From positions 1,240,001-1,304,000 of the forward strand of contig OZ218958.1 in NCBI GenBank assembly GCA_965112735.1: a stretch of DNA of 64,000 nt, written 5' to 3'. Shown in pieces: positions 16,945 to 64,000 of the stretch (its first letter is position 1; each line of letters opens with the position of its first letter). Under the pieces are notes generated by a model. It saw only the letters and a program-made list of their open reading frames with translations, made no database searches and had not been told where the DNA came from. Position numbers and translations under genes: made by a program. The DNA is from Phaeosaccion multiseriatum (lineage: Eukaryota > Protista > Ochrophyta, other classes).

Positions 16945-19900
16945 TCACAGGTTGGCTTTGGATGACACCGCATACGTCTTGGGGATGGTTCGGGGAGGGT
17001 TGAGGGGTGCGGGAGGAGAGGCCTTCTTGCCTCCTCCGCCTCTGCTGCTCTTCTTCTTGATGGCCGCCAGCTTGGAGGCAATCTTCCTGCCGTAGTCTGC
17101 ATCCGCAGCGGCAAAGTTGGCGACGGCTCGCTGTTGGAGGAACTCTTGTGCTCCGGACAGGTGGCCTGGGGAGGGGAGAGGAGGAGGAGGAGAAGAAGAA
17201 GAAGGAGGAGGAGGAGAGGAGGAGGAGGAGGAGGAGAGGAGGAGCAGGAGGAGGAGGAGGAGGAGGAGTAGAAGGAGCAGGAGAAGGAGGAGGAGGAGGA
17301 GGAGGAGGAGGAGGAGGAGGAGGAGGACGAGGAGTAGAAGGAGCAGCAGGAGGAGGAGGAGGACGAGGAGTAGAAGGAGCAGGAGGAGGAGGAAGAAGAA
17401 GAAGAAGAAGAAGAAGAAGAAGAAGAAGAAGAAGAAGAAGGAGGAGGAGGAGCGGGGGGGGGGAGGAGGGGGAGGGGGAGGAGGAGGAGTGGGAGAATGA
17501 ATGAATGCAACACTTGGGTAGGAGAGCGCACAGTGCAGTGACATGAGATACAACCCACACGCACTCACGCACACACGCGCGCACGCACGCACGCACGTCA
17601 CTCACGGCACGCACGCAGTCACCCATTCATTCACTTTGTGTGGAAAGAGTCGGACCGACAGTGCTCCGCACTCCCGTCCCCTCCCCTCTCGGTTTCCTCC
17701 CCTCCCCTTCCCTCCTCCCCTGCCCTTCACCCCTCCCCTCCCACTCCCACTCCCACTCCCTTGCTCCAACGCCTCACCAGCAATGTTATCCGTCAGCCTC
17801 TCTCTCGCTCCCTGGTCCATCACCGACCGATACAGATCGCCTGCCTGCTTGAAGTTCTCCTCATCTGCTGAGTTGTAACGGGCCACATCTGCCGTCCCGG
17901 CCACACCCTTCGAGTAAGAGTCAGTGTGCCAGGCCTGCTTGGTGTCAGGCTGCGGGCCGCTGAAGGAGTTAGGGAAATAGTTGGGGGCGTCTCCTTGGTT
18001 GGAGTCGACTCGCATGGGCCCATCTCGTTGGTAGTTGGCCACATCGGAGTTGAAAGCCCTGTTGTGTTTAGGGAGGGGGGGGGGGGCGTTGTGGTAAGAG
18101 GGGTTGTTGGACAAGGAGGTGAAAAGGAGCGGGCATAAGCTGTCTGTATGTATGACACCTCATTCACCTCACTACCTTTCTCACTCCCTTCCTCACTCCC
18201 TCCCTCCCTCCGTTACTGACTCACTCACAGAGTCACTCCCTCCGTCACTGACTCACTCACAGAGTCACTCACTCAGTCACTCACTCACTCACTCACTCAC
18301 TCACTCACTCACTCACAGAGTCACTCACTCACAGAGTCACTCACTCACTCACTCACTCACTCACTCACTCACTCACTCACGCATTCATTGACTCACTGAC
18401 CCACTGACTCACTCACTCACTCACTCACTCCCTCCCTCCCTCCCTCCCTCCCTCCATCACAAACCCGCTCACTCACTCACTCAGTCACTCAGTCACTCAG
18501 TCGCTCACTCACTCACTCAGTCGCTCACTCACTCACTCCCACACTCTCTCACTCACTCAATCACTCACTCACTCACTCACTCACCTGTTGACAGGGATCT
18601 GCTCATAGTTGGCCCCTAGCCTGTGCCTGTGCGTGTCATTGTAGCTGAAGAGCCTGCCCTGCAGCATCTTGTCTGGCGAGGGCTCAATGCCAGGTACCAT
18701 CTGAGAGGGGGCAAAAGCGATCTGCTCGACCTCTGCGAAGTAGTTCTGTGAGAGGAGGAGGACGACGACGCCGAGGAGGGGAAGGAGGGAGGAAGAGGAG
18801 GAGGAGGAGGAGGAGGAGGAGAGGGAGGAGGGGAGGAGGAGGACAAGGAGGAGGAGTAGAAGGCGGAGGAGGGATAAGACAGCTATAAATCACTATCCAG
18901 CATGCATCCTTTTCCAAGGCGCGCAGGGAGGAGGGTGGCGGCAGTCACACACACACACGCACGCACGCACGCATGGGCAAGACTGACGCACCTCCGGGTT
19001 TCTGTTGAGCACCATACGGCCGACCTCGGCGAGAGGGAAGTCCTTGTGCGGCCACACCTTGGTCAGATCGAAAGGGTTGAAGGGGGCCCTCTCAGCCTGG
19101 GCATACGTCATCACCTGCGGGGGAGGGGCGGAGGAGGGACGGAGACGAGGAGAGAGTGGAGGAGGAGAGGAGGGGAGGAGGGAGGGAGGAGGAGAGAGAG
19201 TCACTAAGTGAGTGAGTGGGTGAGTGGGTGGCTGGGTAAGTAAATGAGTGAACATTCCTTCCTTCCTTCGTTCTTTCCTTCCCTCTTAAGTGAGTAAGTG
19301 AATGAGGGAGGGAGAGAGTGAGGAGTGCCTAAGTGATTGTCTGGGTGAGTAAGTGAGCGTGAGTGTGTGCGTGAGTGAGACAATGACAGTGAGTAAACTA
19401 TTATACCTGCATGTACATGGTCCAGCTTGGAAAGTCTCCCTCTCCGATGGCGTTGTACAAGTCGCGCTGGGCGTAGTTGGGGTCCGAGCCGCACAGCTTG
19501 CCTGCGGTACCCAAACAGCAACAGGAGGAGGAGGAGGAGGAGGAGGAGGAGGAGGAGGGGATAGACATGAGGCATTGGCGTAAAGGTAGAATGGAAGAGA
19601 GGAAGGAGCGAGAGAATGATAAGCGAGGAGCAAAGAAAAGGAGGGAGAGGAGCGACACGAACCGCACCAACACACATCATCACGTACGTACATACGTACA
19701 TACAAACATCCGTAAGTACGTACGTACATACAACACAGTCATACATAACGATACGTACCAGCCTCGTCCGCGGAGAGACACCGAATACCCTGATCCGTCT
19801 TGAGATGGTACTTGACGTACACCGCCTCTCCCTTGGCATTCACGTTCTTGAAGGTGTGTCCTCCGTAACCGTTCATGTGTCTGTAACCGTCGGGCGTCCC

Positions 19901-21731
19901 TCGGTCGCTAAACAGGATGGTCACCATGTGAGTGGTCTCGGGTCTGAGAGAAATGAAGTCCCAGAAGGCATCTGGGTCGGGAAGGTGGGTGCGAGGATTC
20001 CGCTTCTGGGTGTGGATGAAGCTGGGGAAGAGGATGGGATCCCGAACTGGGGTGGAGTAGGAGAAGTGAGGGGGAGGGGGGACGGGGCGGGGAAGGGGAA
20101 GGGGAAGGGGAAGGGGAAAGGGTTTCGTTTCGGTAAGTTTAGGGAGAGAAGACATGTGTGCGTGAGTGGGGTTGGTGGGTACATGTGCAAGACGAGAGGA
20201 TGACGACGACGCTTCCCAGCCAAAAACAAAATCATTCATGATTCACTCACTGAAGAAGACGGGCACGTTGTTAGCCACTAGGTCCCAGTTCCCCTCCTCG
20301 GTGTAGAACTTCACAGCGTAGCCGCGAGGGTCTCGGGCAGTGTCAGCGCTGCCGCTCTCGCCTCCCACGGTGCTGAAGCGGGCACCCACAGGGGTCCTCT
20401 TACCCACACTGCTGAACATCTTTGCCCTTGTGAACTGTTGGGCGAAGGGGGTGGTGACTTCGAAGTAGCCAAACGCGCCTGCATTAGGGGACGGGATTGG
20501 ATGGATGGCAGCGGATGGCACCGGGAGGGGGTGGCAGGAGAGGGGAGGCAGATGGTTAGAGGGGGGTAGAGGATGGCAGGGGAGGGTCTACTGTGGGTGG
20601 GAGCGAAGGGAGGGAGAGGGTGATGAGGGTGTACTTTGTGGCAAGACGAAAGAGCAGTGTGTTTGTGTGTGTGTGTGTGTGTGTGCGTGCGTGTGTGTAT
20701 GCGCGTTTGCTTCAGCCATTTTGTCATCCTGACCGCTGAGAGAGAGAAAAGATGGAGCGAGAGAGAGCGTGCGCGCAAAGGGGTGGACTCCGTACTATGC
20801 AACCCAGTCAGAGGCAAGACGGGCCGAAGACACATGGCGTGGAGCCTGCGCATAAAAAGATTCGAAACCGCGACACACCACTGCACTACACCGAACACTA
20901 ACCTGAGCCTTTGGCATGCACCACTCGCTCAGGGATCCTCTCCCTGTCGAAGTGAGCAAGGTGGTCGATCAGGGTAAAGTCCTGCAGCAGAATGGGTCCA
21001 CGGGGGCCCACAGTCTGCGACTCTGTGATGCTCTCAATGGGGCGTCCGCCGCTGGTGGTCAGGGTCTGTGGGAGAAGAGGAGGAGAGGGGGAGAGGAAGG
21101 GTGGTGGGGAGGGGAAGGAGTCAAAGGCAATGTCGGTAGTGAATGTATTGATATTGACCAATCAAAGGGGGGGGGGTCATCGAAGTGGGACCCCCATTGA
21201 AGCGTCAACAGCAGCTGGGATTGGCCCCAACGCAGTAAGATACCCTGGAGTTTCGTGCCCCAGAGGCACTTTGCGACACAGCGCCACTTGTCTCCTTCCC
21301 CCCGTTCTCGACAGAGACGGTATCGAGTACTCAACAAACACCAGCCCAGCACACCTCTCTGCCTTACTCTTCTCCCCTCCAAGCGCACTTCCATGCGTGT
21401 GGGGAAGTCAGCTCAGCAATTGGGCATGAGCTTTCACAGGCGCGGCGCAGTATCAGAATTGACTCCGTCCCAAGCCCCTTCTACCCCTCCATCTCTTCGC
21501 GTCTACTTTGCCCCTCTGACGTAGGCTCCTCTTTCGCCTGTCTCCCTCCGCTTTCTCTCTCAACCTCTTGGCGCCTCTTGCGTCTTGTTGAAGTGCTTCA
21601 TGGAAAACAGTCCGCTGGTCATGAGTCATCAACAAGTCAAAAGCTCTTCGTCCATACATACTCACCCGCTTGCCCGAGGCCCCGGAGGCAAAGGCCTGCA
21701 GCTGATTATCAGCCTTATCCCTTCCAGACAT
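16945..21731 (-). CDS. CAT: Monofunctional heme catalase (clade 3 type), 9 exons, C-terminal KANL
   Basis: Exons 21666-21731, 20903-21065, 20251-20478, 19760-20046, 19407-19501, 18992-19114, 18585-18745, 17778-18058, 16945-17165. Active site [36 protein letters not shown], heme ligand [14 protein letters not shown]. Confidence 0.97.
18170..18584. repeat. (CACT)n tetranucleotide microsatellite in a catalase intron
   Basis: Direct observation. A similar tract lies at 31482-31655. Confidence 0.9.
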
Positions 21732-38308: not shown

Positions 38309-40678
38309 ATGGAGCGATCTTCCAGCAGTGTAGCGCCTCCGATCATGGAACGAGGCCTCACCATTGAGATACCTGAACCACCCGACGACAGCAGCAGCTC
38401 GGCGGCGGCTCCGATCATGGAGCAGGGACTTGCGCTTGCAGCGCCTCCGACCTGGGAGGAGGGACTGACTATCGAGGTACAGCATACATGAAGAGGCGAG
38501 AGAGAGAGTAGCAGATCAGGCAGTGGTGGTGCGTGCGTTGGTCTAAAAGAGACGGACGGGCCTCTTCGTGTGCTTGCTTTCTCCCATTATGCTGGCTTGT
38601 CCCTTTCCCCGCTGCTCGCCAAAGTACAATTCCTCTCTCCCTCCCATCTCCCTCCCTCTACCCCCCTCTCCCCTCACCTCCCTCGCGCCCCCTCTCCTCC
38701 TCTCGCTCACTCACCCCCCCCCCTCTCGCAGGCGAAGCGCCTCTGCCAGGCCATACGATATGGGGTGAAGACAGCAAAGATCAAGACCATCATAAGACAG
38801 CTGCTTGCCGAGCGCGGAAGAGCCAGTTTGGAGCAACCCATACACGACGATGGAACCACAGCCATAGTCCTAAGTGCCGAGTATGGTCGCGCAGACGTCG
38901 TGGAGCTTCTACTGGAGGAAGGGGCGTATATCACCACTGGAGGAGGACCGGGGGGAAGGACGCCCTTGGTGGCAGCGAGTCAGCACCAAAAGCTCAGCGT
39001 GGTGAAAGTGTTGTTGAGCGCAGGAGCCCCGGTGGACCAAGTGGACGACGCTTGCATGACGCCCCTGATGTGGTCCGCGCAACTCGGACATGGTACAGTG
39101 GTGGCCATGCTCGTCTCAGCAGGCGCACGCGTAGACAAGCAGAGGCCTGATGGCTTCTCGGCCCTCATTATGGCATCGGACAGTGGGAAAACGTCTGTTG
39201 TGGAGCAGCTCATCAGGGCGAAGGCGAATGTAGATCTGGAGACGAGCAATGGATGCACTGCCCTGGGGCTTGCGGCCGATCAAGGGCGCGTGGCAGTTGT
39301 GTCTGTGCTACTGGCTGCCCAGGCTTCGGTGGATCATACCGATGAGAATGGGGAGACTCCTTTGATGTTTGCCAGTGAGAATGACCACCCCAAAGTGGTC
39401 TCCAAGCTCCTGTCTGCCCAGGCTGACGTGGAGCATACCAATCCGAATGGTGAGAATGCCTTAATGGCGGCTGCGCTAGCGGGCAACGCCGCGGTGGTGA
39501 GGACGCTACTGTCTGCAAACGCCAAAGTGAATCATACACAGGCAAACGGATGCACGGCGCTCATGTTCGCCAGCCACAGCGGACACACTGCTGTAGTGGC
39601 ACGGCTCATCAAGGCAAAGGCATTGGTAGACACAGCGAATGAAAGTGGATCGACCGCCCTCATCACGGCCGCAAAGAATGGGAGTGTGGCAGTGGTGGAG
39701 CTGCTACTCTCTGCCAATGCAAGCGCAGACATGACTAACCACGGCGGGTGGACTGCGCTCATGGCATCTTCGTCTGACGGTCATGTGGGAGTCGTCAAGG
39801 CTCTTCTGCGATCGCGTCGGGGCCTGGACGTAAATCTTGGGATGGAGAATGGAGAGACAGCGCTGTCAATGGCCTGTGAGAATGGGCACGAGGCGTGTGT
39901 GGTGCTGCTCATTCACGCGAAGGCAAACTTGAATGCCACCGACCATCAAGGATGGACACCGCTGATGGTGGCCGCGCAGAGGGGGCACACGAAGGTGGTG
40001 GAGCAGCTCGTCGCCGCGAAAGCAAGCTTGAATGTCGCCGATCACCAAGGATGGACGCCGCTGATGGCGGCCGCGCAGAGGGGGCACACGAAGGTGGTGG
40101 AGCAGCTCGTCGCCGCGAAGGCAAGCTTGGATGAAACAGACAATGTGGGATGGACGGCTCTGAAACTGGCCTGTCAGAACGGGCACGAGGCAGTGGTGGT
40201 GCAGCTGCTCTCTGGCCACGTCAGTCTGGATCATGGGATGGAGGGAGGCATCACCGCTCTGATGTTAGCGTCCCAAAACGGGCACTTGGGAGTTGTGACG
40301 CTGCTACTCTCTGCCCAACTCAGTGACGTGAATATCGAGAGAGACGAGAGGGAGAACGGCGAGGTCCGAGGCACGATTGAGGAGGACGAGTATGAAGTGG
40401 CCAACAATGATACCGGAGATGACGCGTGGGTGAGGAGTGCCTCTCTGGAAACGCAAGCAGGGGTGCGGCAGAAGAGGGGCTGGTCTTGGGGATGGGGCAT
40501 GCGACAGAACATCGGGAGGAGGGAGGAGAATGGACAGAGCCATGGTGTGGGCCCATATCCGCAAACGCAAACTGGACGGCTGCAGAAGCTGTGGCATAGA
40601 TTGCGGGCGCGACAGCGGTGGAGAAGGTCATCTCGGCAAACGCATCCTCGATTCCGACCCAAGTCAAGTGCAGCCTAA
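38309..40678 (+). CDS. Ankyrin-repeat protein (roughly 15 repeats), 2 exons
   Basis: Exon 38309-38476 (GT donor, phase 0) joins exon 38732-40678 (CAG acceptor) in frame. Repeated 33-aa GxTALMxAxxxGHxxVVxxLLxAxAxVD units. Confidence 0.9.
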
Positions 40679-43294: not shown

Positions 43295-44846
43295 AACAAA
43301 AGAGCCTCCCTCCCCCCCGTCATGTCTCCAAAACACCCATCCATACAAGCCTCTCTCTACCCTCTTCAGGAAGCTCCGTCTCCCCCCAGGGCCACCCCAC
43401 CCCACCCCACCCCCCACCCCCCCCCTCCACTCCCTCCCCTGCTCCACCCTCTCTCTCTCACCTCTCCAACACGTTCACGAGCCTCTTCCGGAGTTCCTTC
43501 TCCCCCGAAGGGATGCCCTCAAAGAGCCTGAGGTCGTCGTCGCAGTGCTCAAGAGCGTAGGCGGTGAGGTATTTGATGTAATCCTCGGCAAGGCACATGT
43601 CGTCCTCGAGCTCTGCAAATGCGATCTTTGGGGGTAAGACAAGTAAGGGGACAGGGGGACAGGGGGGCAATGGAAACTTCAACTTCAAGTAGCGTAAGGA
43701 GAGGTGGGGAGGTGGAGTGGAGTGGCGAAAGGGATGTCTTCTCTCCCTCTTGCCTCTCTCTTTGTCTCTCGCTCCTCCCTGCCCTGCGCCCCTTCGCACC
43801 TCGCTGCCCACCCCCGTGGGTATAAGCACCCCCTTCTCCCTCCCTCCCTCCCTCCCTCCCTCCATGTGGCGTACCTCTGGCTCAATCATCCAGAACTCTG
43901 CCAAGTGGCGTGCGGTGTTGCTGTGTTCGGCGCGGAAAGTGGGGCCGAAGGTGTACACGTCACTCAAAGCGCAGCAATGGGTTTCTACGTTGAGCTGTCC
44001 TGAAACTGTCAGGCATGTTCGCTTGCCGAAGAAGTCCTATTTGTGACAGGAGGTTTGCGGGGGGAGGGAGGGGAGGAAGGAGCGGACGGGAGGGAGGAAG
44101 GAAGGCAGAGAGGGAGAGACGGAGGGGGTTCAAAGGCAGCGAACGTCTATCTGTCAGAAACCCAGTGTCAGAGACCCACTGTCAGAGAGAAACCCAAAGT
44201 GAGATACCCAAGTCCGGGTAGGACAGAGCGGCTCAGCTCTCTCAACTCAAGACAGGCACACATATAACATGCACCCACACGAGAGGAGGGAGACAACGAC
44301 TCTGTCTCACAGTTGGCGAGCCGCCGCTGGGTATCACAAACCCACCTGCTTTACCTACACTGTGAAAACTCCCTGTGAATCACCAACCCACCTACCTACC
44401 CCCTGTGCCCACCTGTGCATAGTCGATGTTCCCCTCCTTGGTCTTGGCCTTGGCCTGCACCTGTCCGTCCTCGCCGAGCACTGTGGTGACCACAAACTGC
44501 TCCCCCGCTCCTTCGCAATCCGCGCCCGTGATGAGTGGAGTGTGCACGTACAAAAACCCTGTGCATCAAAAACAAAAACACAAAAACACAAAATGGTCAG
44601 GGTAAAAGCAAAAAAAAGATCAAGCAAAGGTTAAGGTTAAGCGCCCGTGACCAGAGCGAATTGTGTACGCACAAGAAAGCCTCGTATTCGTACCAAAAAG
44701 GTCAAGCAAGCGATTAAGCAAAGATGGAAGCCAAGAGGGAGAGGAAGGGTAGTGTTGAAGCGGCGTTACGTTTGCTGCGTGCGTAAGGGGTGCGTATGTG
44801 TACGTCACGTGGGCTCTCTCCGTCTCCCACCCCTACGTCAAGGGGA

Positions 44847-52134: not shown

Positions 52135-55100
52135 ATGAAGCCATCTTGTTGGCGGGGGGGGCTGCCGCTGGCGCTGTTGGCACTCATCGGAGAGCACTTT
52201 CTTCACGTCCGAGGCCAAACAGGTTAGTAGAAGGTTTGCTCGACATGCTCCTTCCTCAACCCAAGTGAGCGAATAGGCAAGTGGACGCTATGACTGTAGT
52301 CGTCGCTTGCCCGAGTTTCCTTCTGGGCTGGTGTTCGTGATTCCTTACCACACCCTCCCCACTTTTGCTTGTCCATCTGGCGCGCAACTAGACTTGAGCA
52401 CTGCGTGTACGGGGTCATACGACTCCAACACGAAGACATGCACGTGCGCCTCTCCTTCTGACCAAGTGACCTGTGCCGGCGATACTTGCCAGGTGCGTGC
52501 ACAGGCCCATACCCCCCTTCTCACTAGCGATCCCTGGGCCCTGCTGACCGCTCCTTGTTGACTCGCTGTGTCCTCCATCCCGACTCTTGACTTGTTGTCT
52601 GCTGATGCATTCTAAGTGCTGGTGCTCAGTGAGTCTTCGCAAACAGCTGTACGTGAGTTAAGTGAAGCCCTCTGACGCCCGTCTCCTTGCCTCTTGCTGG
52701 TGCTACCTCTGCCTTGCCGTTGGCACCTGCTGCGCCTTTCTACACTGTCCGGCCGGGCTCTTCGCTGCTCTTGTTGGGTATCGCGCATGGGGGTCGGACC
52801 ATTTCCTCCACGCGTACCCGCGTGTCTCTTCCTCGCCTCCACAGGGCATCACCTTCATTGTAAGTGCTTGACTTGCATCATCTTTGTTGTGGCAAGCACT
52901 CTCCTTGGCATTTGTTGGGTGTTAGCCTGCCCGAAAAGACCCACCAAAATCCTAACACCCTACTGCTGCCCTTTGCTTGTTGTCTTGCTGTGCTCATCTC
53001 TATCATCGTATGCGGCTGCTGGCTCCCACGCCTTCGACCCATCTCGCTCGCTTCTGCTCACCTGTCATGAAGGATTGCGCCGTGACGTGTGCCGGCTTTG
53101 AAGTCTGCCAAGTGAGTAACGAAGTGTATTGGAGCAGCTGCTGCCCGCTCATCAGTTTGTCCAGCTCCAGCCAGCTCTCTCGCTGCCTGTCCGATTGGAT
53201 TGTGTGTCGTACCCTCCTGTGGCGCAGGTGCAGGGCAGGGCCCACACGTTAAGCCCTCCCCCCCTCTCCTAATGTCCCCCCTGAGCCCCTCTGCTGCCCT
53301 GCCGTATGCCCTCTTTTCACGCCTGTACTCACCACGCTCTCCTACTAAAACCATGCTCTCCCCCCTGCTCCCCTCAAACCATAGGAGGCCACGTTCGAAG
53401 GCGAATCGAGCGCAGCATGCTCTTCGCAGGAATCATGTCGTGTGAGTGTTCAGCCAATCCATAGGCTACCCGCTCTCCCACCCTGGCCGACTCCTTAAGC
53501 CTTGCCGTACTCATGACTGTCGTTGCACGCGTGGCGACGCACACCTCAAGCCTCCCCCCCCCCGCTGACCTCCTCTCTTGGCCCTCTGCTGCTTCCTGCT
53601 CTCTCCTCTCGTCCACACCCACCCTGCTCCCCTCGAACTATAGAGGGCCATGTTCGGAGGCGAATCGAGAGCAGCATGCTCCGGATTTAACTCATGTGTT
53701 GTGAGTGATCAGCTGACCAATATCCGCTCCTGCTGGCTGCCTGGCCGGCTCCTTAAGCCTTGCCTTGCTTACTCTGACCTTCCGCTGCACGCATGACGGC
53801 GCACGCCTCGAGCCTTCACCCTCTGCTGACCTTTCCTCTGTGCCCTTCTGCTGTGGTTCCTGCTCTGTTCTCTCGTCCACACCCCACCCTGCTCTCCCCT
53901 CGAACTATAGAGGGCCACGTTCGAAGGCGAATCGAGCGCAGTATGCTCTGGAGATATACTATCATGTCAGGTCTGTACGCAGTCACAGCCCAAGTCCGCG
54001 GTGCACGGCTGAGCGAATGTGTGTCTTACTCCTCTTACCGGACCGCTGCACGGCCCATTTCTCTCACTCTGCTTGGCTCCTCGGCTGACCTCCCTCCCCC
54101 CTGTGCCTCTCTTCTTGGCTTCCTGCTCTCTCAATTCAAAACACAGCTTGCCGCGTTTAAGGGAAAGTCTGTCGCTATGTGCAACGTGGACAGAAGCTGC
54201 CTTAATATCCAGGTGTGTGTGTCTGACGAGCGGCCAGCAAAGGCACTGGGACTGGGCCAGCCCATGCAAGGGGACGGTAGAGGAGACAGTGCGTGTACAT
54301 ACTGTGATGTACCACGTGGTGAGATGACGAATGACAACCCGCACCTCTCTCGCACGCTCTCTCACTGTGACCAACAGACACCAGATGGTGTTGACGATGA
54401 TGGTACACCATACACGTCATGCTGCACTGGCGACTTTTGGTGAGTGGTAATGGATGGCAAAGCGCACTTGAGGGGTGCATTTTCTCCCCGGCCCAGCCAA
54501 GGCGTTGAGGAGCTCTACGCAGGGCATTTCGCTTTTGCTCCGCCGCACACAATCCCACTTCTTCCTCCCCCCCCTTACCCCTGTCTTTGTGCGTTGATAC
54601 TCTCGCGAGGCCGTACGGTTGTGAACTTCCCTTTCACGGTGAACACCGCCCATGCGACTTATCTTCAAAACCGATAGCCCCACCACGGACGGGGTAGAGG
54701 TCAGAGTATGTGAAGGTAAGAGCGAATTGAAGTGAACCTCGTCGCTCCCACACTTTGCTGCTTTTCAAGTAGCGCTCGGATTCTTTACTCGTTACCGTCC
54801 ACTCTTTGGCCTCCAGTCTGACAGAAATATTTCTCTCGTACGCTTGTCTTGCGTGTACCACTCGGTCGGTCGCCCCCCGCCCTCCTGCCATTGCGTGCGC
54901 TTCGTGCGGCGGTGAAGGCCCTCCTGATGCAGACACGGACGGGGACGGCGTTTTTGACAATCTCGACAAGTGAGTGCTTCCAGTCCTATGCATGTTGGAC
55001 CGTCGCGTGCGTGTGGATGTGCTGCATGGCCTGGGTGTGGCCTGCCCCGCAGCAGCGCCATGTCTCTTTGGCCTGCATCAGTCCCTGCTTGTTATGTTCG

Positions 55101-58100
55101 CCTCCGTCGTGCGTGAGTGCTTGCGTATGCACCCCACGGGCGCGCTTCTCTCTGTCTGGTGTTAAGTTTTGGCGTACCTGGTCAATCCCCCCACTGCTTC
55201 ACTTCAAAGAATTCCTGATTGCCGTGTCACTTTTCGGTATTAGTAGGAGACCGGGCCATGCTCACATACTCCTTCCCTCTCCACCCTCTCCACGCTTTCC
55301 TGGGCACAGCTGCCCTGAGCAAAGTAACACTGGCCAGGAGGATGCCGATAATGACGGAGTAGGAGACGCCTGCGACATGTAAGGAGTCGGGCTTTATAAA
55401 AGTGTGTGTATGGCATGTGCGTAATTTTCCGGGTTTACTCTTTCTTGTCACTGGTGTTGGCTGAATGCCTCCCACTGCTCCACTTGAAATGCAAGTGCTG
55501 GACCGCTGCTGATTGCCGTATCACTGCGTTGGTATTAGTAGGAGACCGACCGGCCCATGCTCACAGACTTGTGTCCTTGCCCCATCCCTACCCCCCCATT
55601 CCTCCCTCTCCACGCTTTTCTCGGCACAGCTGCCCTCAGATAGCCAACCCCCTGCAGATTGAAGTTGAAGGGTGGGACGCGTGTTCAGGTGAGAGAGGGG
55701 CTGACCTGTGATTACGCGGCTGGAAGGGAAACTTGCAAGGAGGGGTAGGCCACCTCCGGAGGCGCTTTGCCATTTGCTGAGCTCGGCCTTGCGGGTGGGC
55801 AAGCTAAGCTTCTCCACCTCGTTGCGTGTGACACTCCGTGGTCTGATGATACTCTTTGCTGCTCTGCTGAGTTTCCTTCTGGGCTGGTGTTCGTGATTCC
55901 TCACCACGCACCCTCCCCACTTTTGCGTGTCCATCTGGCGCGCAACTAGACTTGAGCACTGCGTGTACGGGGTCATACGACGCCAGCACGAAGACATGCA
56001 CGTGCGCCTCTCCTTCTGACCAAGTGACCTGTGCCGGCGATACTTGCCAGGTGCGTGTGCAGGCCGATGTCCCCCGACTTCTCTCCAGCGATCCGTGGGC
56101 CCTGCAGACCACCTCCTTGTTGACGCGCTGCGTCCTCCATCCCGACTCTTGACTTGTTGTCTGCTGATGCGTTCTAACTGCTGGTGCTCAGTGAGTCTTC
56201 GCAAACAGCTGTACGTGAGTTAAGTGAAGCCCTCTGACGCCCGTCTCCTTGCCTCTTGCTGGTGCTACCTCTGCCTTGCCGTTGGCACATGCTGCGCCTT
56301 TCTACACTGTCCGGCCGGGCTCTTTGCTGCTCTTGTTGGGTATCGCGCATGGGGGTCGGACCATGTCCTCCACGCGTACCCGCGTGTCTCTTCCTCGCCT
56401 CCACAGGGCATCACCTTCATTGTAAGTGCTTGAATTGCATCATCTTTGTTGTGGCAAGCACTCTCCTTGGCATTTGTTGGGTGTTAGCCTGCCCGAAAAG
56501 ACCCAGCCACCAAAATCCTAACACCCTACTGCTGCCCTTTGTTTGTTGTCTTGCTGTGCTCATCTCTATCATCGTATGCGGCTGCTGGCTCCCACGCCTT
56601 CGACCCATCTCGCTCGCTTCTGCTCACCTGTCATGAAGGGTTGCGCCGTGAATTGTCCCAACGACTACTTCTGCAGAGTGAGTAGGAAAGTGCCTTGGAG
56701 CAGCTGCTGCCCGCTCATCAGTCGGTCCAGCTCCAGCCAGCTCTCTCGCTGCCTGTCCGATTGGATTGTGTTTCGTAGCCTCCTGTGGCGCAGGTGCAGG
56801 GCAGGGCCCACACGTTAAGCCATCGCCCCCTCTCCTAATGTCCCCCCTGAGCCCCTCTGCTGCCCTGCCGTATGCCCTCTTTTCACGCCTGGACTCACCA
56901 CGCTCTCCTACTAAAATCATGCTCTCCCCCCCCCTGCTCCTCTCAAACCACAGGACGTCACGTTCGAAGGCAAATCGAGCGCAGCATGCTCTGCAGCTAA
57001 CTCATGTCGTGTGAGTGATCAGCTGACCAATATCCGCTCCTGCTGCCTGGCCGGCTCCTTAAGCCTTGCCTTGCTTACTCTGACCTTCCGCTGCACGCAT
57101 GACGGCGCACACCTCGAGCCTTCACCCTCTGCTGACCTCTTCTCTGTGCCCTTCTGCTGTGGTTCCTGCTCTGTTCTCTCGTCCACACCCCACCCTGCTC
57201 TCCCCTCAAACCACAGGACGCTACGTTCAAAGGCGAATCGACCACAGCATGCTCTGCAGCTAACTCATGTCGTGTGAGTGATCAGCTGACCAATATCCGC
57301 TCCTGCTGCCTGGCCGGCTCCTTAAGCCTTGCCTTGCTCACTTGTGACTTTCCGCTGCCCGCGTGGCGACGCACACCTCAAGCCCCCCCCCCCCCCGCTG
57401 ACTTCCTCTCTTGGTCCTCTACTGCTTCCTGCTCTCTTCTCTCGTCCACACCCACCCTGCTCCCCTCGAACCATAGGCCACGTTTGAAAGCAAATCGAGC
57501 GCAGCATGCTATGGGTCTTTCTCATGCGAGGCGAGTGTTCAGCCAATTCATACCCGCTCTCCTACCCTGGCCGGTTTCTTGAGCGAGTCTTGCCGTACTC
57601 GTGACTTCCGTTGCACGCGTGACGACGCACACCTCAAGCCTACTCCCCCCCCGCTGACCTCCTCTCTTGGCCCTCTACTGCTTCCTGCTCTCTTCTCTCG
57701 TCCATACCCCCCCTGCTCCCCTCAAACCACAGGAGGCCACGTTCGAAGGCGAATCGAGAGCAGCATGCTCCGGATTTAACTCATGTCTTGTGAGTGATCA
57801 GCTGACCACTATCCGCTCCTGCTGCCTGGCCGGCTCCTTAAGCCTTGCCTTGCTTACTCGTGACCTTCCGCTGCACGCATGACGGCGCACGCCTCGAGCC
57901 TTCACCCTCTGCTGACCTCTTCTCTGTGCCCTGCTGTTGTGGTTCCTGCTCTGTTCTCTCGTCCACACCCCACCCTGCTCCCCTCGAACTATAGTATGCC
58001 ACGTTCGAAGGCGAATCGAGCGCAGTATGCTCTGGAGATATATCATGTCAGGTCTGTACGCAGTCACAGCCCAAGTCCGCGGTGCACGGCTGAGCGAATG

Positions 58101-59714
58101 TGTGTCTTACTCCTCTTACCGGACCGCTGCACGGCCCATTTCTCTCACTCTGCTTGGCTCCTCGGCTGACCTCGCTCCCCCCTGTGCCTCTCTTCTTGGC
58201 TTCCTGCTCTCTCAATTCAAAACCAGCTTGCCGCGTTTAAGGAAAAGTCTGTCGCTACGTGCAACGTGGACAGAAGCTGCCTTAATATCCAGGTGTGTGT
58301 GTCTGACGAGCGGCCAGCAAAGGCACTGGGACTGGGCCAGCCCATGCAAGGGGACGGTAGAGGAGACAGTGCGTGTACATACTGTGATGTACCACGTGGT
58401 GAGATGACGAATGACAACCCGCACCTCTCTCGCACGCTCTCTCACTGTGGCCAACAGACACCAGATGCTGTTGACGATGATGGTACACCATACACGTCAT
58501 GCTGCACTGGCGACTTTTGGTGAGTGGTAATGGCAGGCAAAGCGCACTTGGGGGGTGCATTTTCTCCCCGGCCCAGCCAAGGCGTTGAGGAGCTCTACGC
58601 AGGGCATTTCGCTTTTGCTCCGCCGCACACAATCCCACTTCTTCCTCCCCCCCCTTACCCCTGTCTTTGTGCGTTGATACTCCCGCGATGCCGTACGGTT
58701 GTGAACTTCCCTTTCACGGTGAACACCGCCCATGCGACTTATCTTCAAAACCGATAGCCCCACCACGGACCTTAACGGGGTAGAGGTCAGAGTATGTGAA
58801 GGTAAGAGCGAATTGAAGTGTAGGAAGGACCTCGTCGCTCCCACACTTTGCTGCTTTTCAAGTAGCGCTCGGATTCTTCACTCGTTACCGTCCACTCTTT
58901 GGCCTCCAGTCTGACAGAAATATTTCTCTCGTACGCTTGTCTTGCGTGTACCACTCGGTCGGTCCCCACCCCCTCCTGCCGTGGCGTGCGCTTCGTGCGG
59001 CGGTGACGGCCCTCCTGATGCAGACAACGACAATGACGGCGTTGCTGACCGTTTCGACAAGTGAGTGATTTCATACCCATGCATGTTGGACCGTCGTGTG
59101 CGTGTGGATGTGTTGCGTGGCCTGGGTGTGGCCTGCCCCCCAGCAGCGCATCTCTCTCTCAATGGCCTGCATCAGTCCCTGCTTGTTGCTTTTGCCCTTG
59201 TCGTGCATGTGCGCGTATGCACCCCAAGGGCGCGCTTCTCTCTGTCTCTGGTGTTTGGTTTTGGCGGGGCTAGTCAATCTCCTCACTGCTTCACTTGAAG
59301 TACAGGTGCTGGACCGCTCGCTGATTGCCGTGTCACCTTGAGGAGACTGGCTGGGCCATGCTCACAGACTTGTGTCCTTGCCTTATCCCTACCCCTTCAT
59401 CCCTTACTCTCCACGCTTTACTCTGCACAGCTGCCCTCAGATAGCCAACCCCTCCAGGAGGATGTCGATGACGACGGAGTAGGAGACGGCTGTGACAAGT
59501 AAGAAGTCAGGCTTTACAAAGAGTGTGTATGACATGTGTGTACTTCCCCCTGGGTTTACTCTGTCTGGTCATTTGTGTTGTTGGCTCAAAACCCCCCCAC
59601 TACTTCACTTCAAATGAAAGCCCTGCATCGTTCGCTTATCGCCGTGTCACTTTGTTGGCATTGGGAGACCGGGCCATGCTCACAGACGTGGGAGGGCACC
59701 TGCCTGTGTGTGTG

Positions 59715-59760
<46 letters not shown>

Positions 59761-62700
59761 TGTAAGCTGCGTGCGTGCCCCCTTCCATGCGCTGCCTCTC
59801 TTTGTACGGCAGCCTGCGGTAGCCTGTGCTTGTCGAGGTTGCCTGTTTATGCAGGCGTGCGATTTGGCTCCCTCCTGTGTGCAGCCAAGTGGCACCTCAG
59901 GCGTGTACCTTCCTTCCTTCTGCGGAGGAGGCCCCCCTCACCACACATGTGCTCCCTTCTCTTCTCTCCGGCTTCCTTGCAGCTGTCCCTCTGTGCCCAA
60001 CGCGGATCAAACTGACTTGAACGGCTGTGAAGGTGAGGAAAGGGGGGGGGCAGGGAAGGAGGGGGTGCAGACCGAAAGAGCAACAAGCAAGCCGGAGGGG
60101 AGGAGGGTTGGGGGAGACGCGAAACAGGGGGTGCTTCCAATAGAACATGCGAGTCCTTTTGGTGATCTGGACCTATGGCATGACTGTGGGGCAAAGGTGT
60201 GTTTCTTGCTCGGTCCTGGTCCATCCACTTGTAGCTCGCTGGCACATTGACTCCACACCCTCCCTGTTCCTATGCTTGTGGCCTCTCTTTTTTGTGTTCT
60301 GCTCTCTCTTACTGCTTGTCGCCCATTCGGCGCGCCGCCAGCATTGAGCTCTGCGTGCACGGAGTCATACGTTGTTTCAACCACGGACGAAGGTTCGACA
60401 AGAACGTGCACGTGCGCCTCTACTTCTGACCAAGTGACCTGTGCCGGCGATACTTGCAAGGTGCGTGTGCAGGCCGATGTCCCCCGACTTCTCACCAGCG
60501 ATGGATGGGCCCTGCAGACCACCTCCTTGTTGACTCGCTGCGTCCTCCATCCCGGCTCTTGACTTGTTGTCTGCTGATGCATTCTAAGTGCTGGTGCTCA
60601 GTGAGTCTTCGCAAACAGCTGTACGTGAGTTAAGTGAAGCCCTCTGACGCCCGTCTTCTTGCCTCTTGCTGGTGCTACCTCTGCCTTGCCGTTGGCACCT
60701 GCTGCGCCTTTCTACACTGTCCGGCCGGGCTCTTCGCTGCTCTTGTTGGGTATCGCGCATGGGGGTCGGACCATTTCCTCCACGCGTACCCGCGTGTCTC
60801 TTCCTCGCCTCCACAGGGCATCACCTTCATTGTAAGTGCTTGAATTGCATCATCTTTGTTGTGGCAAGCACTCTCCTTGGCATTTGTTGGGTGTTAACCT
60901 GCTCGTACAGACCCACCAAAATCCTAACACCCTACTGCTGGCCTTTGCTTGTTTTCGTGCTGTGCTCGTATCTGCCATCGCGTGCGGCTGCTGGCTTCCA
61001 CGCCTTCAACCCACCTCGCTCGGTTCTGCTCACCTGTCATGAAGAGTTGCGCCGTGGAGTGCGCCGACCCACAAGTCTGCAGAGTGAGTAGGGGAGTGCC
61101 TTGGAGCAGCTGCTGCCCGCTCATCAGTCGGTCCAGCTCCCACTCTCTCGCCGCCTGTCCGGTGGGATTTTGTGTCACACCCTCCTGTGGCACAGGTGCA
61201 GGGCAGGGTCCACGCGTTAAGCCCTCCCCCCTCCCTCCTGATGTCCCCCCTGTGCCCCTCTGCTGTTCTGTCTCCTGCCCTCTTTTCACGCCTGTACTCG
61301 CCCTGCTCTCCTACGGACCTACGGAAACCATAGGGTGCCAAGTTTGGTGGCACCTCAACTGCCACCTGCTCTGCCAGGCGATCTTGTGTGGTGAGTGACC
61401 ATCATCCCAAGTCGCCTCTCGCTACCTGGGCGTTCCCACACGTTTGGCAGCCAGGCCTTCCCCCCTTCTCCTGACCCTTCCCTTGGCTGTGCCCGTCTGC
61501 TGCCCTGCCCCGTGTTTTCTTCCTCTCGTTGATACCCACCCTGTTGCACACAGTTGGCCAAGTTCGAAAGCGATTCCAGGGCTGTCTGCTCCAGGCCGTA
61601 CTCATGTCAGGTGAGGTCTCACCTGGCCCAAGTCCGATCGGCCTCTGTGCCTAGCCACTCTGTGTCTTTCTCTTGTTGATCGCTACGCGACTCACACCGC
61701 ACGACCCCTAAGTCCTGCCTCACTCCTGACCTCCCACCTGTGCTCCTCTGCTGACCTCCTCCCCTCTTCTCTCTGTACCACCCCTCGAACCAGAATACCG
61801 AGTTTTTCGGCACTTCGATCGCAGACTGCTCCGAGACGAATTCCTGTCGCGTGAGTCTCAAGTCCGCTCACGTTGCCTGGCTGATGCTGTCGCTTGCTCC
61901 TGTCGCACCGCCGCCGAACGGCCGATACCTCAAGCCTTGCTCCTCTCCTGAACTTCCCTCCGTGCCCCCCGGCCTCCTTCTTTGTGTCGTCGACACCCGT
62001 CCTGCTCCACACAGGGTGCTGATCTATTTGACGCTTCCACCGCCACTTGCGACATTTTTGATAGCTGCGAGCTGCTCAAGGTGCGTTTGGCGGACAAGAG
62101 ACCAGCGAAGGCACAGGACCAGCTTATGCAAGGGGAAGTAGAGGAGACACGCTTGTCCCCTTCGGTGATGTGATAGCTAAGATGTACACTTGGGGATGTG
62201 GTGACTTACCATCCGCACCTCGCTCTCTCGCACGCTCTCTCACTGTGGCCAACAGACACCAGCTGCTGACGGGGATGGTACACCATACACGTCATGCTGC
62301 ACTGGCGACTTTTGGTGAGTGGTAATGGCAAGCAAAGCGCACTTGGGGGGTGCATTTTCTCCCCGGCCCAGCCAAGGCGTTGAGGAGCTCTACGCAGGGC
62401 AATTCGCTTTTGCTCCGCCGCACACAATCCCACTCCTTCCTCCCCGCCCCTTGCCCCTCTCTTTGTGCGTTGATACTCCCGTGTTGCCGTACGGTTGTGA
62501 ACTCCCCTTTCACGGTGAACACCGGCCATGCAACCATCTTCAAAACCGATAGCCCCCCCACCACCAACGGGGTGGAAGTCAGAGTATGTGAAGGTAAGAG
62601 CGAATTGAAGTGAACCTCGTCGCTCCCACACTCTGCTGCTTTTCAAGTAGCGCTCGGATTCTTTACTCGTTACCGTCCACTCTTTGGCCTCCAGTCTGAC

Positions 62701-63767
62701 AGAAATATTTCTCTCGTACGCTTGTCTTGCGTGTACCACTCGGTCGGTCCCCACCCCCTCCTGCCGTGGCGTGCGCTTCGTGCGGCGGTGACGGCCCTCC
62801 TGATGCAGACACGGACGGGGACGGCGTTGTTGACCATCTCGACAAGTGAGTGCTTCCAGTCCTATGCATGTTGGACCGTCGTGTGCGTGTGGATGTGCTG
62901 CGTGGCCTGGGTGTGGCCTGCCCCCCAGCAGCGCATCTCTCTCTCAATGGCCTGCATCAGTCCCTGCTTGTTGCTTTTGTCCTTGTCGTGCATGTGTGCG
63001 TATGCACCCTGTGTGTGTGTGTGTGTGTGCGTGTGTGTGTGTGTGTTTGTGCGTGTGTGTGCGTGTGTGTATGTGTGTCTGCGTGTGCGTGTGTGTGCGT
63101 GTGTGTATGTGTGTGTGAGAAGTCAGGTTTCACAGCTGTGTATGTCCGCCCCCCCGTGTTTTTCTCTGTCTTGTCACTGGTGTTGGCTGAATGCCTCCCA
63201 CTGCTCCACTTGAAATGCAAGTGCTGGACCGTTCGCTGATTGCCGTGTCACCTTGTCGGTATTAGTAGGAGACCGGGTCATGCTCACAGACTTGTGTCCT
63301 TCCCGCTTCCCTTCCCCTTCATCCCTCCCTCTTCACGCTTTGCTGCACAGCTGCCCTCAGATAGCCAACCCCCTGCAGATTGAAGTTGAAGGGGGGGACG
63401 CGTGTCAAGGTGAGAGAGGGGCTGACCTGTGATTACGCGGCTGGAAGGGAAACTTGCAAGGAGGGGTAGGCCACCTCCGGAGGCGCTTTGCCATTTGCTG
63501 AGCTCGGCCCTGCGGGTGGGCAAGCTAAGCTTCTCCACCTTATTGCGTGTGACACTCCGTGGTCTGATCATGATACTCTTTGCTGCTCTGCTGGTCGGCG
63601 GCGCGATGTGCTTCTCACCCCCATAACTTGCCATCATGGTCATGCCGCTGGGTCGTGTGCTGCCTTCTCATTCAGACACCGACGGAGACGGGATTGTGGA
63701 CACGGAGGACAAGTGAGTGGACGTGGGAGGGCACCTGTATATAGATGTATATGAGTATGTGTGTGTA

Positions 63768-63810
<43 letters not shown>

Positions 63811-64000
63811 GTGTGTATGTGTGTGTATTGGTGTGTGTGTGTATGTGTGTCTGCGTGTGCGTGTGTGTGTATGTGTGTATGCGTGTTTGAGAAGTCAGGT
63901 TTCACAGCTGTGTATGTCCGCCCCTCCGTGTTTTTCTCTGTGTTGTCACTGGTGTTGGCTGAATGCCTCCCACTGCTCCACTTGAAATGCAAGTGCTGGA
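52135..64000 (+). CDS. Secreted Cys-rich modular repeat protein with thrombospondin type-3 repeats, encoded by about 40 micro-exons; runs off the window
   Basis: Signal exon 52135-52222 ([29 protein letters not shown]). Module 1 exons 52392-52492, [52647-52652], 52845-52859, 53073-53111, 53385-53441, 53644-53700, 53911-53970, 54147-54212, 54378-54439, 54678-54715, 54933-54969, 55310-55378, 55630-55688 splice in one frame, including [35 protein letters not shown] (TSP type-3 consensus). Modules 2 and 3 start at 55950 and 60342. Last exon seen is 63676-63712. One apparent frameshift at about 59450. Confidence 0.85.
52310..63600 (+). repeat. Three tandem segmental duplications (about 3.6, 4.4 and 3.3 kb) with nested ~260-bp sub-repeats
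   Basis: Near-identical blocks, e.g. 52560-53070 / 56120-56635 / 60530-61040 and 54350-55030 / 58430-59130 / 62230-62910. Exon-plus-intron units of about 260 bp repeat at 53340-53970 and 56900-58050. Confidence 0.95.

What the first reader, a model, noticed from the sequence alone, without database searches (positions are those of the whole stretch)
52135..64000. Micro-exon cassette gene: a secreted Cys-rich solenoid/TSP3 protein with one repeat per symmetric exon and variable cassette number
Seen in sequence: about 40 exons of 6-119 nt with canonical splice sites chain into one frame after a signal-peptide exon (apart from one 1-nt break, reported separately). Each module contains an array of phase 0-0 exons of 54-66 nt, each encoding one xxxFxxxSxxxCxxxxSCx repeat. 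Module 1: [58 protein letters not shown]. Module 2 has five: [94 protein letters not shown]. Module 3: [57 protein letters not shown]. Acidic TSP type-3 Ca-binding repeats follow each array. Established: one-repeat-per-exon shuffling is described for brown-algal ROCO-LRR and NB-ARC-TPR genes, and symmetric micro-exon genes generate variants in schistosomes. Inference: this is an extracellular, disulfide-pinned solenoid whose rungs can be added, lost or skipped without frameshift, a candidate surface-diversification system (adhesion, recognition or cell covering). I do not recognise the 19-aa repeat as a named family.
Basis: partly seen in the sequence, partly recalled or inferred. Interest (0 to 1): 0.9.

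Follow-up and report, generated by a model that had tools for sequence, protein, structure and literature searches.

The report
Micro-exon gene for secreted Cys-repeat/TSP3 protein
A real-looking but transcript-unverified algal gene is built from 42 tiny exons and encodes a secreted, calcium-binding repeat protein in which each 19-residue cysteine repeat is one exon, repeat number differs between modules, and a few loop codons are hypervariable on a nearly unchanging DNA framework.

Summary
From the ATG at 52135, 42 exons of 6-119 nt on the + strand chain into one frame and run off the window end. Forty introns are GT-AG and one is GC-AG. The only break is a missing C in exon 59431-59498.

The window holds three tandem modules. 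Each has an N-cap, one repeat split over 6+15+39-nt exons, 3, 5 or 3 single-exon 19-20-aa repeats, a 22-aa terminal repeat, a C-cap, then TSP3 repeats. Pfam confirms TSP_3 across predicted junctions (42.4 bits). The Cys repeat matches nothing in Pfam or PDB, and my length-limited database searches found nothing.

Added here: repeat codons 1, 14-16 and 19 are hypervariable (pairwise difference 0.54). Framework codons are nearly fixed even at third positions (0.115), and introns lie between (0.30). Skipping the broken exon restores the frame.

Not shown: splicing (the only runs found behave as DNA), the solenoid fold (AlphaFold inconclusive), and any isoform or strain variation.

Best reading: a secreted modular Ca-binding matrix or adhesion protein that evolves by intron-mediated cassette gain and loss. 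A dedicated diversification system is possible but unproven. First-stage notes flag similar genes elsewhere in this genome.

The parts
52135..52222 (+). Exon 1: start codon and signal-peptide-like N-terminus (88 nt, phase 0 to 1)
   Evidence: ATG with A at -3 and no upstream in-frame ATG. Basic n-region, a 10-residue Leu/Ala core, and V-R-G before the likely cleavage site. Donor CAG|GTTAGT. Judged by eye; no signal-peptide predictor was available.
52392..52492 (+). Module 1 N-cap exon (101 nt, phase 1 to 0, six Cys)
   Evidence: 98% identical to the module 2 copy and 89% to the module 3 copy. No Pfam family.
52647..52652 (+). Module 1 candidate 6-nt micro-exon (Leu-Tyr)
   Evidence: CAG|CTGTAC|GTGAGT, identical in all three modules. 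Inclusion is unproven.
52845..52859 (+). Module 1 15-nt micro-exon (GITFI)
   Evidence: Perfect splice sites, identical in all three modules.
53073..53111 (+). Module 1 39-nt exon. Together with the 6-nt and 15-nt exons it encodes one 20-aa repeat unit.
   Evidence: The spliced 20-aa unit aligns with the single-exon repeats. The loop between its Cys residues is hypervariable: 69-78% exon identity against 92-99% in the upstream intron and 87-95% in the downstream intron.
53385..53970 (+). Module 1 array: three single-exon repeats (53385-53441, 53644-53700, 53911-53970), phase 0-0, 57/57/60 nt
   Evidence: TRF period 259 nt.
54147..54212 (+). Module 1 terminal 22-aa repeat exon (66 nt, phase 0-0)
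   Evidence: Keeps the F, S, C and SC framework.
54378..54715 (+). Module 1 C-cap, two exons (54378-54439 with phase 0 to 2; 54678-54715 with phase 2 to 1), four Cys
   Evidence: 98-100% identical to module 2.
54933..55688 (+). Module 1 TSP type-3 repeats, three exons (54933-54969 with phase 1 to 2; 55310-55378 with phase 2-2; 55630-55688 with phase 2 to 1)
   Evidence: Spliced 55 aa: Pfam TSP_3 42.4 bits, E 5.4e-11, with the match running across the first junction. The middle exon alone scores 19.4 bits.
55950..56677 (+). Module 2 head: N-cap 55950-56050, 6-nt exon 56209-56214, 15-nt exon 56407-56421, 39-nt exon 56639-56677
56954..58051 (+). Module 2 array: five single-exon repeats (56954-57010, 57217-57273, 57477-57530, 57733-57789, 57995-58051)
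   Evidence: TRF period 263 nt, 4.3 copies. Flanking introns are mosaics of the module 1 intron types.
57477..57530 (+). The odd cassette: 54 nt, lacks the first codon, followed by the only GC-AG intron
   Evidence: Donor GAG|GCGAGT. The nearest GT would shift the frame.
58227..59060 (+). Module 2 tail: terminal repeat 58227-58292, C-cap 58458-58519 and 58758-58801, first TSP3 exon 59024-59060
   Evidence: The first TSP3 exon differs from module 1 at 10 of 37 nt, while the intron before it has 7 mismatches and 9 gapped bases in about 220 nt.
59431..59498 (+). Module 2 second TSP3 exon carrying the 1-nt break (68 nt where the M1 counterpart is 69)
   Evidence: A C run ending at about 59453 is one base shorter than in a paralogous contig. 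Contigs of X1, X2 and X3 agree with the window. Inclusion gives a stop at residue 486; skipping gives none.
59983..60032 (+). Module 2 last exon (50 nt, phase 2 to 1), a short Cys-Pro-rich linker of a type different from module 1's last exon
   Evidence: Preceded by a (TG)n tract at 59705-59763.
60342..61083 (+). Module 3 head: N-cap 60342-60460 (119 nt, six extra residues), 6-nt exon 60619-60624, 15-nt exon 60817-60831, 39-nt exon 61045-61083
61334..62080 (+). Module 3 array: three single-exon repeats (61334-61390, 61554-61610, 61794-61850) and terminal repeat 62015-62080
   Evidence: Exons are 64-76% identical to modules 1 and 2, against 80-83% in the array introns.
62256..63409 (+). Module 3 tail: C-cap 62256-62314 and 62553-62593, TSP3 exons 62809-62845 and 63351-63409. 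The middle TSP3 cassette is absent, and a (TG)n tract lies in the 505-nt intron.
63676..63712 (+). Further TSP3 exon (37 nt, phase 1 to 2); the gene continues beyond the window
   Evidence: DxDxDGxxDxxD motif with good splice sites. The window then ends inside the next intron.

Best explanation
This is the 5' part of a large, intron-rich gene in a photosynthetic eukaryote. It encodes a secreted, cysteine- and aspartate-rich modular protein. Each module is a capped rod of disulfide-bonded 19-aa repeats followed by calcium-binding thrombospondin type-3 repeats. I read it as an extracellular Ca-dependent matrix or adhesion protein whose repeat rods display a row of short variable loops between the two cysteines of each repeat.

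The gene grows, shrinks and reshuffles through homologous recombination in its near-identical introns. The nested symmetric phases keep every such event in frame: 0-0 for repeats, 2-2 for the TSP3 cassette, 1-1 for whole modules.

Shown: the exon chain, the module anatomy, TSP_3 membership, the different cassette counts, and the hypervariable-codon pattern. Inferred: splicing, secretion, disulfides, the rod or solenoid fold, and the matrix or adhesion role.
For: - The exon chain has consensus splice sites and no stop other than the one break.
- A Pfam domain is reconstituted only after splicing: TSP_3 scores 42.4 bits against 19.4 for a single exon.
- The product is 10% Cys and 10% Asp.
- S8, C12, S17 and C18 are invariant, and F4 and A10 nearly so, in 14 repeats.
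- Cassette number is 3, 5 and 3, and the module 2 units have mosaic flanking introns.
- Heads and tails of all three modules are 92-99% identical including their introns. The arrays, the 39-nt exon and the first TSP3 exon differ in patches.
- Pairwise difference is 0.54 at codons 1, 14-16 and 19, 0.11 at framework codons (0.115 at their third positions), and 0.30 in introns.
- pN/pS is 0.62-0.69 against module 3, so the protein is under constraint overall.
- The strong T-over-A skew of the + strand is confined to this stretch, which fits transcription of that strand.
Against: - No spliced read or contig was seen. The four runs that hold the stretch cover introns and exons alike and show no splice joints.
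- The 1-nt break would truncate the protein unless that exon is skipped.
- No homologue was found in any library, so function rests on composition and on the TSP3 repeats alone.
- The C-terminus lies outside the window, so an anchor or a further domain could change the reading.
- The fold is unknown.
Confidence: 0.6

Rival explanations
1. A dedicated diversification system. Cassettes are skipped or chosen at the RNA level, or reshuffled at the DNA level, so that cells or strains display different loop arrays for recognition, adhesion specificity or evasion.
For: All array exons are phase 0-0, so any subset splices in frame. One cassette is broken, and only its skipping gives a full-length product. 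Hypervariable loop and junction codons sit on a near-invariant DNA framework. Whole codons are replaced between copies whose flanking introns differ by 2 in 143 nt. M1 against M2 gives pN/pS of about 3, bootstrap 1.6-7.6.
Against: There are no RNA, isoform or between-strain data. Part of the M1-M2 excess comes from recombination between neighbouring cassettes rather than new substitutions: the first module 2 unit has an a-type 5' flank, but its loop codons and 3' flank match the neighbouring units. Ungapped intron columns may underestimate the neutral rate, so 0.54 may reflect lack of constraint rather than positive selection. No signalling or anchoring domain is in view.
Confidence: 0.2
2. 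A decaying gene: a recently amplified tandem array that is no longer needed and is drifting toward a pseudogene.
For: There is a frameshift in exon 59431-59498, supported by contigs of three runs. There is one non-canonical GC donor and a shortened cassette. pN/pS is at or above 1 between the two youngest modules.
Against: Forty-one other exons keep open frames and good splice sites. All framework Cys, Ser and Phe codons and the Ca-binding Asp codons are intact. pN/pS is below 1 against module 3, upper bounds 0.93-0.99. The broken exon belongs to a symmetric class whose loss is harmless, and module 3 lacks it altogether.
Confidence: 0.12
3. A non-coding tandem repeat whose apparent exons are chance open frames.
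For: The region is a 260-nt tandem repeat nested in a 3.6-4.1-kb repeat, and there is no transcript evidence.
Against: A curated domain model passes its threshold only on the spliced product. The pattern of variation is codon-periodic and position-specific. Exon base composition differs from introns, 23% against 15% A. Phases are consistent through 42 exons.
Confidence: 0.02

Closest known systems
Thrombospondin/COMP type-3 calcium-binding repeats (Pfam PF02412)
   Same: DxDxDGxxDxxD motifs alternate with Cys-Pro segments. The spliced segment scores above the Pfam gathering threshold, and six such motifs lie in the window.
   Different: No EGF repeats or thrombospondin C-terminal domain are in view. 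Here the repeats are short linkers between Cys-repeat modules, each coded by 37-69-nt exons of phases 1-2, 2-2 and 2-1.
Ectocarpus ROCO-LRR and NB-ARC-TPR genes with one repeat per exon (Zambounis et al. 2012, PMC3341825)
   Same: Each repeat is one phase-0 exon of fixed length, repeat number varies between copies, and variation is concentrated at a few positions.
   Different: Those are cytosolic LRR/TPR receptors with 72-nt exons, and inactivated or antisense repeat copies lie in their introns. Here the protein is secreted and Cys-rich with 57-nt exons, and no hidden or antisense copies were found. That paper found very few non-LRR, non-TPR candidates in Ectocarpus.
Schistosome micro-exon genes (MEGs; summarised in PMC5825161)
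   Same: Secreted products, symmetric micro-exons down to 6 nt, and frame-neutral exon skipping possible.
   Different: In MEGs about 80% of the coding region is 6-36-bp symmetric exons that are not tandem homologues, and splice variants are proven by cDNA and proteomics. Here about 55% of a module lies in symmetric exons (my count from the exon lengths). The exons are homologous repeats, and no variant has been shown.
Highly internally conserved repeats with hypervariable sites in fungal NLRs (WD40/ANK/TPR; from my own knowledge of Paoletti, Saupe and Dyrka's work, not checked here)
   Same: Near-identical repeat DNA, a few hypervariable codons, and repeat-number change by unequal recombination.
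   Different: Those are intracellular, intron-free repeat arrays of known folds. Here the repeats are extracellular, each in its own exon, and of unknown fold.
Cys-laddered beta-solenoids such as the Tenebrio antifreeze protein, and capped LRR rods such as lamprey VLRs (structural analogies only, from my own knowledge)
   Same: Short Ser/Ala/Thr/Cys-rich repeats with regularly spaced Cys, and Cys-rich N- and C-caps around the array.
   Different: No sequence similarity. The best PDB matches have E of 0.5 or worse, and the fold is not established.

Membership tests
TSP_3 (thrombospondin type-3 repeat, PF02412) | Score at or above the Pfam gathering threshold (25 bits) | tested here: met
   42.4 bits, E 5.4e-11 on the spliced 55-aa segment of module 1. 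A single exon gives 19.4 bits.
TSP_3 (thrombospondin type-3 repeat, PF02412) | Acidic DxDxDGxxDxxD calcium-binding motif with flanking Cys | tested here: met
   Six motif matches on the + strand between 54932 and 63710. The Asp codons are invariant between copies.
TSP_3 (thrombospondin type-3 repeat, PF02412) | Calcium binding | not testable with these tools
   Needs recombinant protein.
Micro-exon genes in the schistosome sense | Most of the coding region (~80%) in symmetric exons of 6-36 bp | tested here: not met
   Symmetric exons make up about 55% of module 1 and are mostly 57-69 nt. Only the 6-nt and 15-nt exons fall in the 6-36-bp range.
Micro-exon genes in the schistosome sense | Secreted product with a signal peptide | tested here: inconclusive
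   The N-terminus looks like a signal peptide by eye. No predictor was run.
Micro-exon genes in the schistosome sense | Protein variants made by alternative splicing | not testable with these tools
   No RNA-like run was found.
One-repeat-per-exon shuffling arrays (Ectocarpus ROCO/TPR type) | Each repeat is one phase-0 exon of constant length | tested here: met
   Nine of 11 array exons are 57 nt, and all are phase 0-0.
One-repeat-per-exon shuffling arrays (Ectocarpus ROCO/TPR type) | Repeat number differs between paralogous copies | tested here: met
   3, 5 and 3 cassettes in the three modules.
One-repeat-per-exon shuffling arrays (Ectocarpus ROCO/TPR type) | Inactivated or antisense repeat copies inside introns | tested here: not met
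   nhmmer with the exon profile finds only the 11 annotated exons.
One-repeat-per-exon shuffling arrays (Ectocarpus ROCO/TPR type) | Positive selection at defined repeat positions | tested here: inconclusive
   Codons 1, 14-16 and 19 vary more than introns (0.54 against 0.30), and M1-M2 pN/pS is about 3. Recombination between cassettes and the small sample prevent a clean test.
LRR or TPR repeat families | Match to the repeat profile | tested here: not met
   No Pfam family at E up to 10 for three consecutive repeats.
Disulfide-laddered beta-solenoid | Confident predicted or solved solenoid fold | tested here: inconclusive
   AlphaFold2 without an alignment on three repeats gave pLDDT 56, pTM 0.36 and helical segments, which is uninformative.

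The most novel reading that the evidence does not exclude
The gene, with its relatives elsewhere in this genome, is a germline cassette system for surface recognition. A scaffold that is invariant at the DNA level presents one short disulfide-bounded loop per exon. Loop repertoires would be reshuffled by recombination in conserved introns, and possibly selected at the RNA level by cassette skipping. This would be an extracellular, exon-based counterpart of LRR- or WD-repeat diversification in a protist alga, built on a repeat fold not yet described.
Probability: 0.17. Interest if true: 0.85.

Novelty: new variant of a known kind. Interest (0 to 1): 0.6.

Why it matters
If the model is right, ordinary gene callers would probably miss a whole class of secreted proteins in this genome, because no exon is long enough to stand out. 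First-stage notes list several similar genes here, some reportedly fused to lectins or carbohydrate-binding modules.

The locus shows exon shuffling by nested symmetric phases in an unusually clean form outside animals.

The hypervariable loops on a fixed framework give a concrete, testable candidate for how an alga might vary an extracellular binding surface.

The broken, skippable cassette offers a built-in test: full-length protein can exist only if that exon is skipped.

The 19-aa repeat itself appears to be an undescribed domain.

Tried and rejected
- **RNA evidence.** Both run searches returned only four runs of one sample, plus one low-share run. Laid on 54101-60100, they cover introns evenly and give no splice joints, so they behave as DNA.
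- **Two odd joints.** One is a 255-nt skip at 57462/57718 at depth 4. The other is a back-join between 59007 and 54917. I read both as contigs of paralogous modules, not as alleles, because the loose ends there carry paralogue-like sequence.
- **Homology searches.**
  - The 39-aa N-cap against 1.84 billion representatives gave 0 hits.
  - Three repeats (58 aa) against the 5.8-billion library gave none, but only proteins of 32-101 aa were eligible.
  - A stop-free 221-aa frame containing two exons gave none.
  - The Atlas feature search gave a best score of 0.69, which is no lead.
  - PDB by sequence and by repeat profile gave only chance hits.
  - The metagenome scan with the N-cap alignment returned two bacterial contigs whose match lies outside the listed ORFs (≥60 aa) and is interrupted by stop codons nearby, so they are chance hits.
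- **Structure.** The single-sequence model of three repeats was uninformative. I did not send it elsewhere, so no fold search was run.
- **Literature.** No paper links TSP3 repeats with Ectocarpus, or micro-exon genes with algae.
- **A correction to my own reading.** I first read the M1-M2 pN/pS of 3 as plain positive selection. I then saw that much of it reflects recombinant cassettes.
- **Organism.** It was not identified beyond carrying a cyanobacterial-type, presumably plastid, pyruvate dehydrogenase E2, whose nearest eukaryotic cluster is from diatoms.
Full report
**What is in the sequence**

The stretch from 52135 to the window end has about 58% G+C and a strong excess of T over A on the + strand. 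That skew is stronger and more sustained here than anywhere else in the window.

This gave 42 exons of 6-119 nt (median 57) separated by introns of 154-505 nt (median 210). Only 18.8% of the span is coding.

- Donors are GTGAGT in 19 of 41 introns and GT in 40.
- The exception is GAG|GCGAGT after exon 57477-57530. The next GT there would break the frame.
- Acceptors are CAG or TAG in 38 of 41, behind pyrimidine-rich tracts.
- Exons hold 23% A and introns 15%.

The chain reads without a stop, apart from one place.

**Anatomy**

Exon 1 (52135-52222) encodes a signal-peptide-like start: basic residues, a ten-residue Leu/Ala core, and small residues before a likely cleavage site. I judged this by eye only.

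Three tandem modules follow: 52392-55688, 55950-60032 and 60342-63409. Each holds, in order:

- a six-Cys N-cap exon;
- one repeat unit split over 6-nt, 15-nt and 39-nt exons;
- an array of single-exon repeats, 3, 5 and 3 in the three modules;
- a 22-aa terminal repeat;
- a four-Cys C-cap in two exons;
- thrombospondin type-3 exons.

A further TSP3 exon lies at 63676-63712, and the window ends inside the next intron, so the gene continues.

The phases are nested. Repeats are 0-0, the middle TSP3 cassette is 2-2, and whole modules are 1-1. Gain or loss of any of these units therefore keeps the frame.

An nhmmer profile of the array exons finds exactly the 11 annotated copies. There are none in introns, none on the other strand, and none elsewhere in the window. 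Tandem Repeats Finder reports the exon-plus-intron unit as a 259-nt period in module 1 and a 263-nt period in module 2.

**Is it coding?**

The best internal evidence is that a curated domain appears only after splicing. One TSP3 exon alone scores 19.4 bits against Pfam TSP_3. The spliced 55-residue segment scores 42.4 bits (E 5.4e-11, threshold 25), with the match running across a predicted junction.

The variation between copies is also codon-periodic and position-specific. A non-coding repeat would not show that.

**The break**

Exon 59431-59498 is 68 nt where its module 1 counterpart (55310-55378) is 69, because a run of C is one base shorter.

Contigs of runs X1, X2 and X3 agree with the window. 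The X4 contig carries the extra C, but it differs at seven other positions and probably comes from a paralogous module. All four runs are from one sample, probably the one that was assembled. They exclude a consensus slip but not much more.

With the exon included, the frame stops at residue 486. Without it, the 701 in-window residues are stop-free. Module 3 lacks this cassette altogether.

**No transcript evidence**

Splicing, the 6-nt exons, and any exon skipping therefore remain predictions.

**What the repeat is**

Fourteen repeats align to a 19-residue unit. Ser8, Cys12, Ser17 and Cys18 are invariant, and Phe4 and Ala10 are nearly so.

- Three consecutive repeats hit no Pfam family, even at E of 10.
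- Neither the sequence nor the repeat profile hits the PDB below E of 0.5.
- Searches of the large protein libraries found nothing.

Those library searches were restricted: the spliced protein has no reference, and candidate length is tied to query length. This is therefore weak evidence of novelty.

AlphaFold2 on three repeats without an alignment gave pLDDT 56 and is uninformative.

The composition and the capped architecture fit an extended disulfide-stabilised rod. The product has about 10% each of Cys, Ser, Thr, Asp and Ala. Whether that rod is a true beta-solenoid is open.

**How it evolves**

Heads and tails of all three modules, introns included, are 92-99% identical. Three elements differ in patches:

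- The 39-nt exon is 69-78% identical, while the introns beside it are 87-99% identical.
- Module 2's first TSP3 exon differs at 10 of 37 nt from module 1, next to a 97% identical intron.
- Module 3's array exons are 64-76% identical, within introns that are 80-83% identical.

Among the eight array exons of modules 1 and 2, framework codons are almost fixed even where synonymous change is free. Ser8 is TCG eight times, Ser17 is TCA eight times, and Cys12 is TGC eight times.

Codon 1, codons 14-16 (the loop between the two Cys) and codon 19 differ at 0.54 of sites per pair. The comparison values are 0.11 for framework codons, 0.115 for their third positions, and 0.30 for ungapped intron columns.

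Between module 1 and module 2, pN/pS is about 3 (bootstrap 1.6-7.6). Against module 3 it is 0.62-0.69.

I do not take the value of 3 at face value. The flanking-intron patterns show that the module 2 units are recombinants of the module 1 unit types. At least some loop differences were therefore moved in from neighbouring cassettes.

The safe statement is this. Diversity is concentrated in two small patches per repeat. It is reshuffled between cassettes and modules by recombination in the conserved introns. The framework is held constant at the nucleotide level, either by concerted evolution or by splicing signals that such short exons may need. Whether the patches evolve faster than neutral cannot be settled with 11 copies.

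**Function**

I commit to a secreted, Ca-binding extracellular matrix or adhesion protein made of alternating Cys-repeat rods and TSP3 linkers (confidence about 0.6).

It lacks any RNA or population evidence (about 0.2). A decaying gene is less likely, because 41 exons and all framework residues are intact (about 0.12).

**Context and novelty**

The window's other genes have long uninterrupted exons, which makes this gene's structure stand out. Examples are a plastid-type pyruvate dehydrogenase E2 at 10258-12069 on the minus strand and a 702-aa ankyrin-repeat ORF.

The E2 protein points to a photosynthetic eukaryote. Its nearest eukaryotic cluster is from diatoms.

One repeat per symmetric exon with variable number is described for Ectocarpus LRR and TPR genes (PMC3341825). 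Symmetric micro-exons in secreted proteins are described for schistosomes (PMC5825161). TSP3 repeats are a known family.

What is new is the combination and the unnamed Cys repeat. I therefore file this as a new variant of a known kind.

First-stage notes of this scan report the same locus again (s1-334065, s1-334229, s1-336331). They also report similar micro-exon Cys-repeat/TSP3 genes on other pieces of the genome (s1-331570, s1-342148, s1-336288, s1-336349). I could not check those.

Noticed in passing
window 10258-12069 (-): A 603-aa uninterrupted ORF for a cyanobacterial-type, presumably plastid, dihydrolipoamide acetyltransferase (pyruvate dehydrogenase E2). Its nearest eukaryotic Atlas cluster is from diatoms. 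It suggests the organism is a photosynthetic eukaryote.
   Followed up: partly
window 4860-7811 (-), 38570-40678 (+), 17602-18114 and 19739-20239 (-), 43458-43967 (-): Long ORFs that look, by eye, like a cytochrome P450, an ankyrin-repeat protein, catalase fragments and an aminoacyl-tRNA synthetase fragment. Many carry long homopolymer runs of Gly, Ser, Glu or Gln. Housekeeping genes here seem intron-poor, in contrast to the 42-exon gene.
   Followed up: no
window 59705-59763, 63010-63117, 63758-63886: (TG)n microsatellites lie in the introns where the TSP3 cassette content differs between modules: the broken cassette in module 2, and the missing cassette in module 3. This matches a first-stage note about microsatellites at cassette gain and loss points.
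   Followed up: partly
window 57531: The only GC-AG intron of the gene follows the only 54-nt cassette, which also lacks the first codon.
   Followed up: partly
window 57462/57718 and 59007/54917: A depth-4 contig skips exactly one cassette unit (255 nt), and another contig joins module 2 tail sequence to module 1 tail sequence. These are probably contigs of off-window paralogous modules rather than alleles.
   Followed up: partly
L001 6001-6075 and L002 349-423: The metagenome hits to the N-cap pattern lie in bacterial contigs, outside the listed ORFs and in a frame broken by stop codons nearby. They are chance matches and are irrelevant to the finding.
   Followed up: yes
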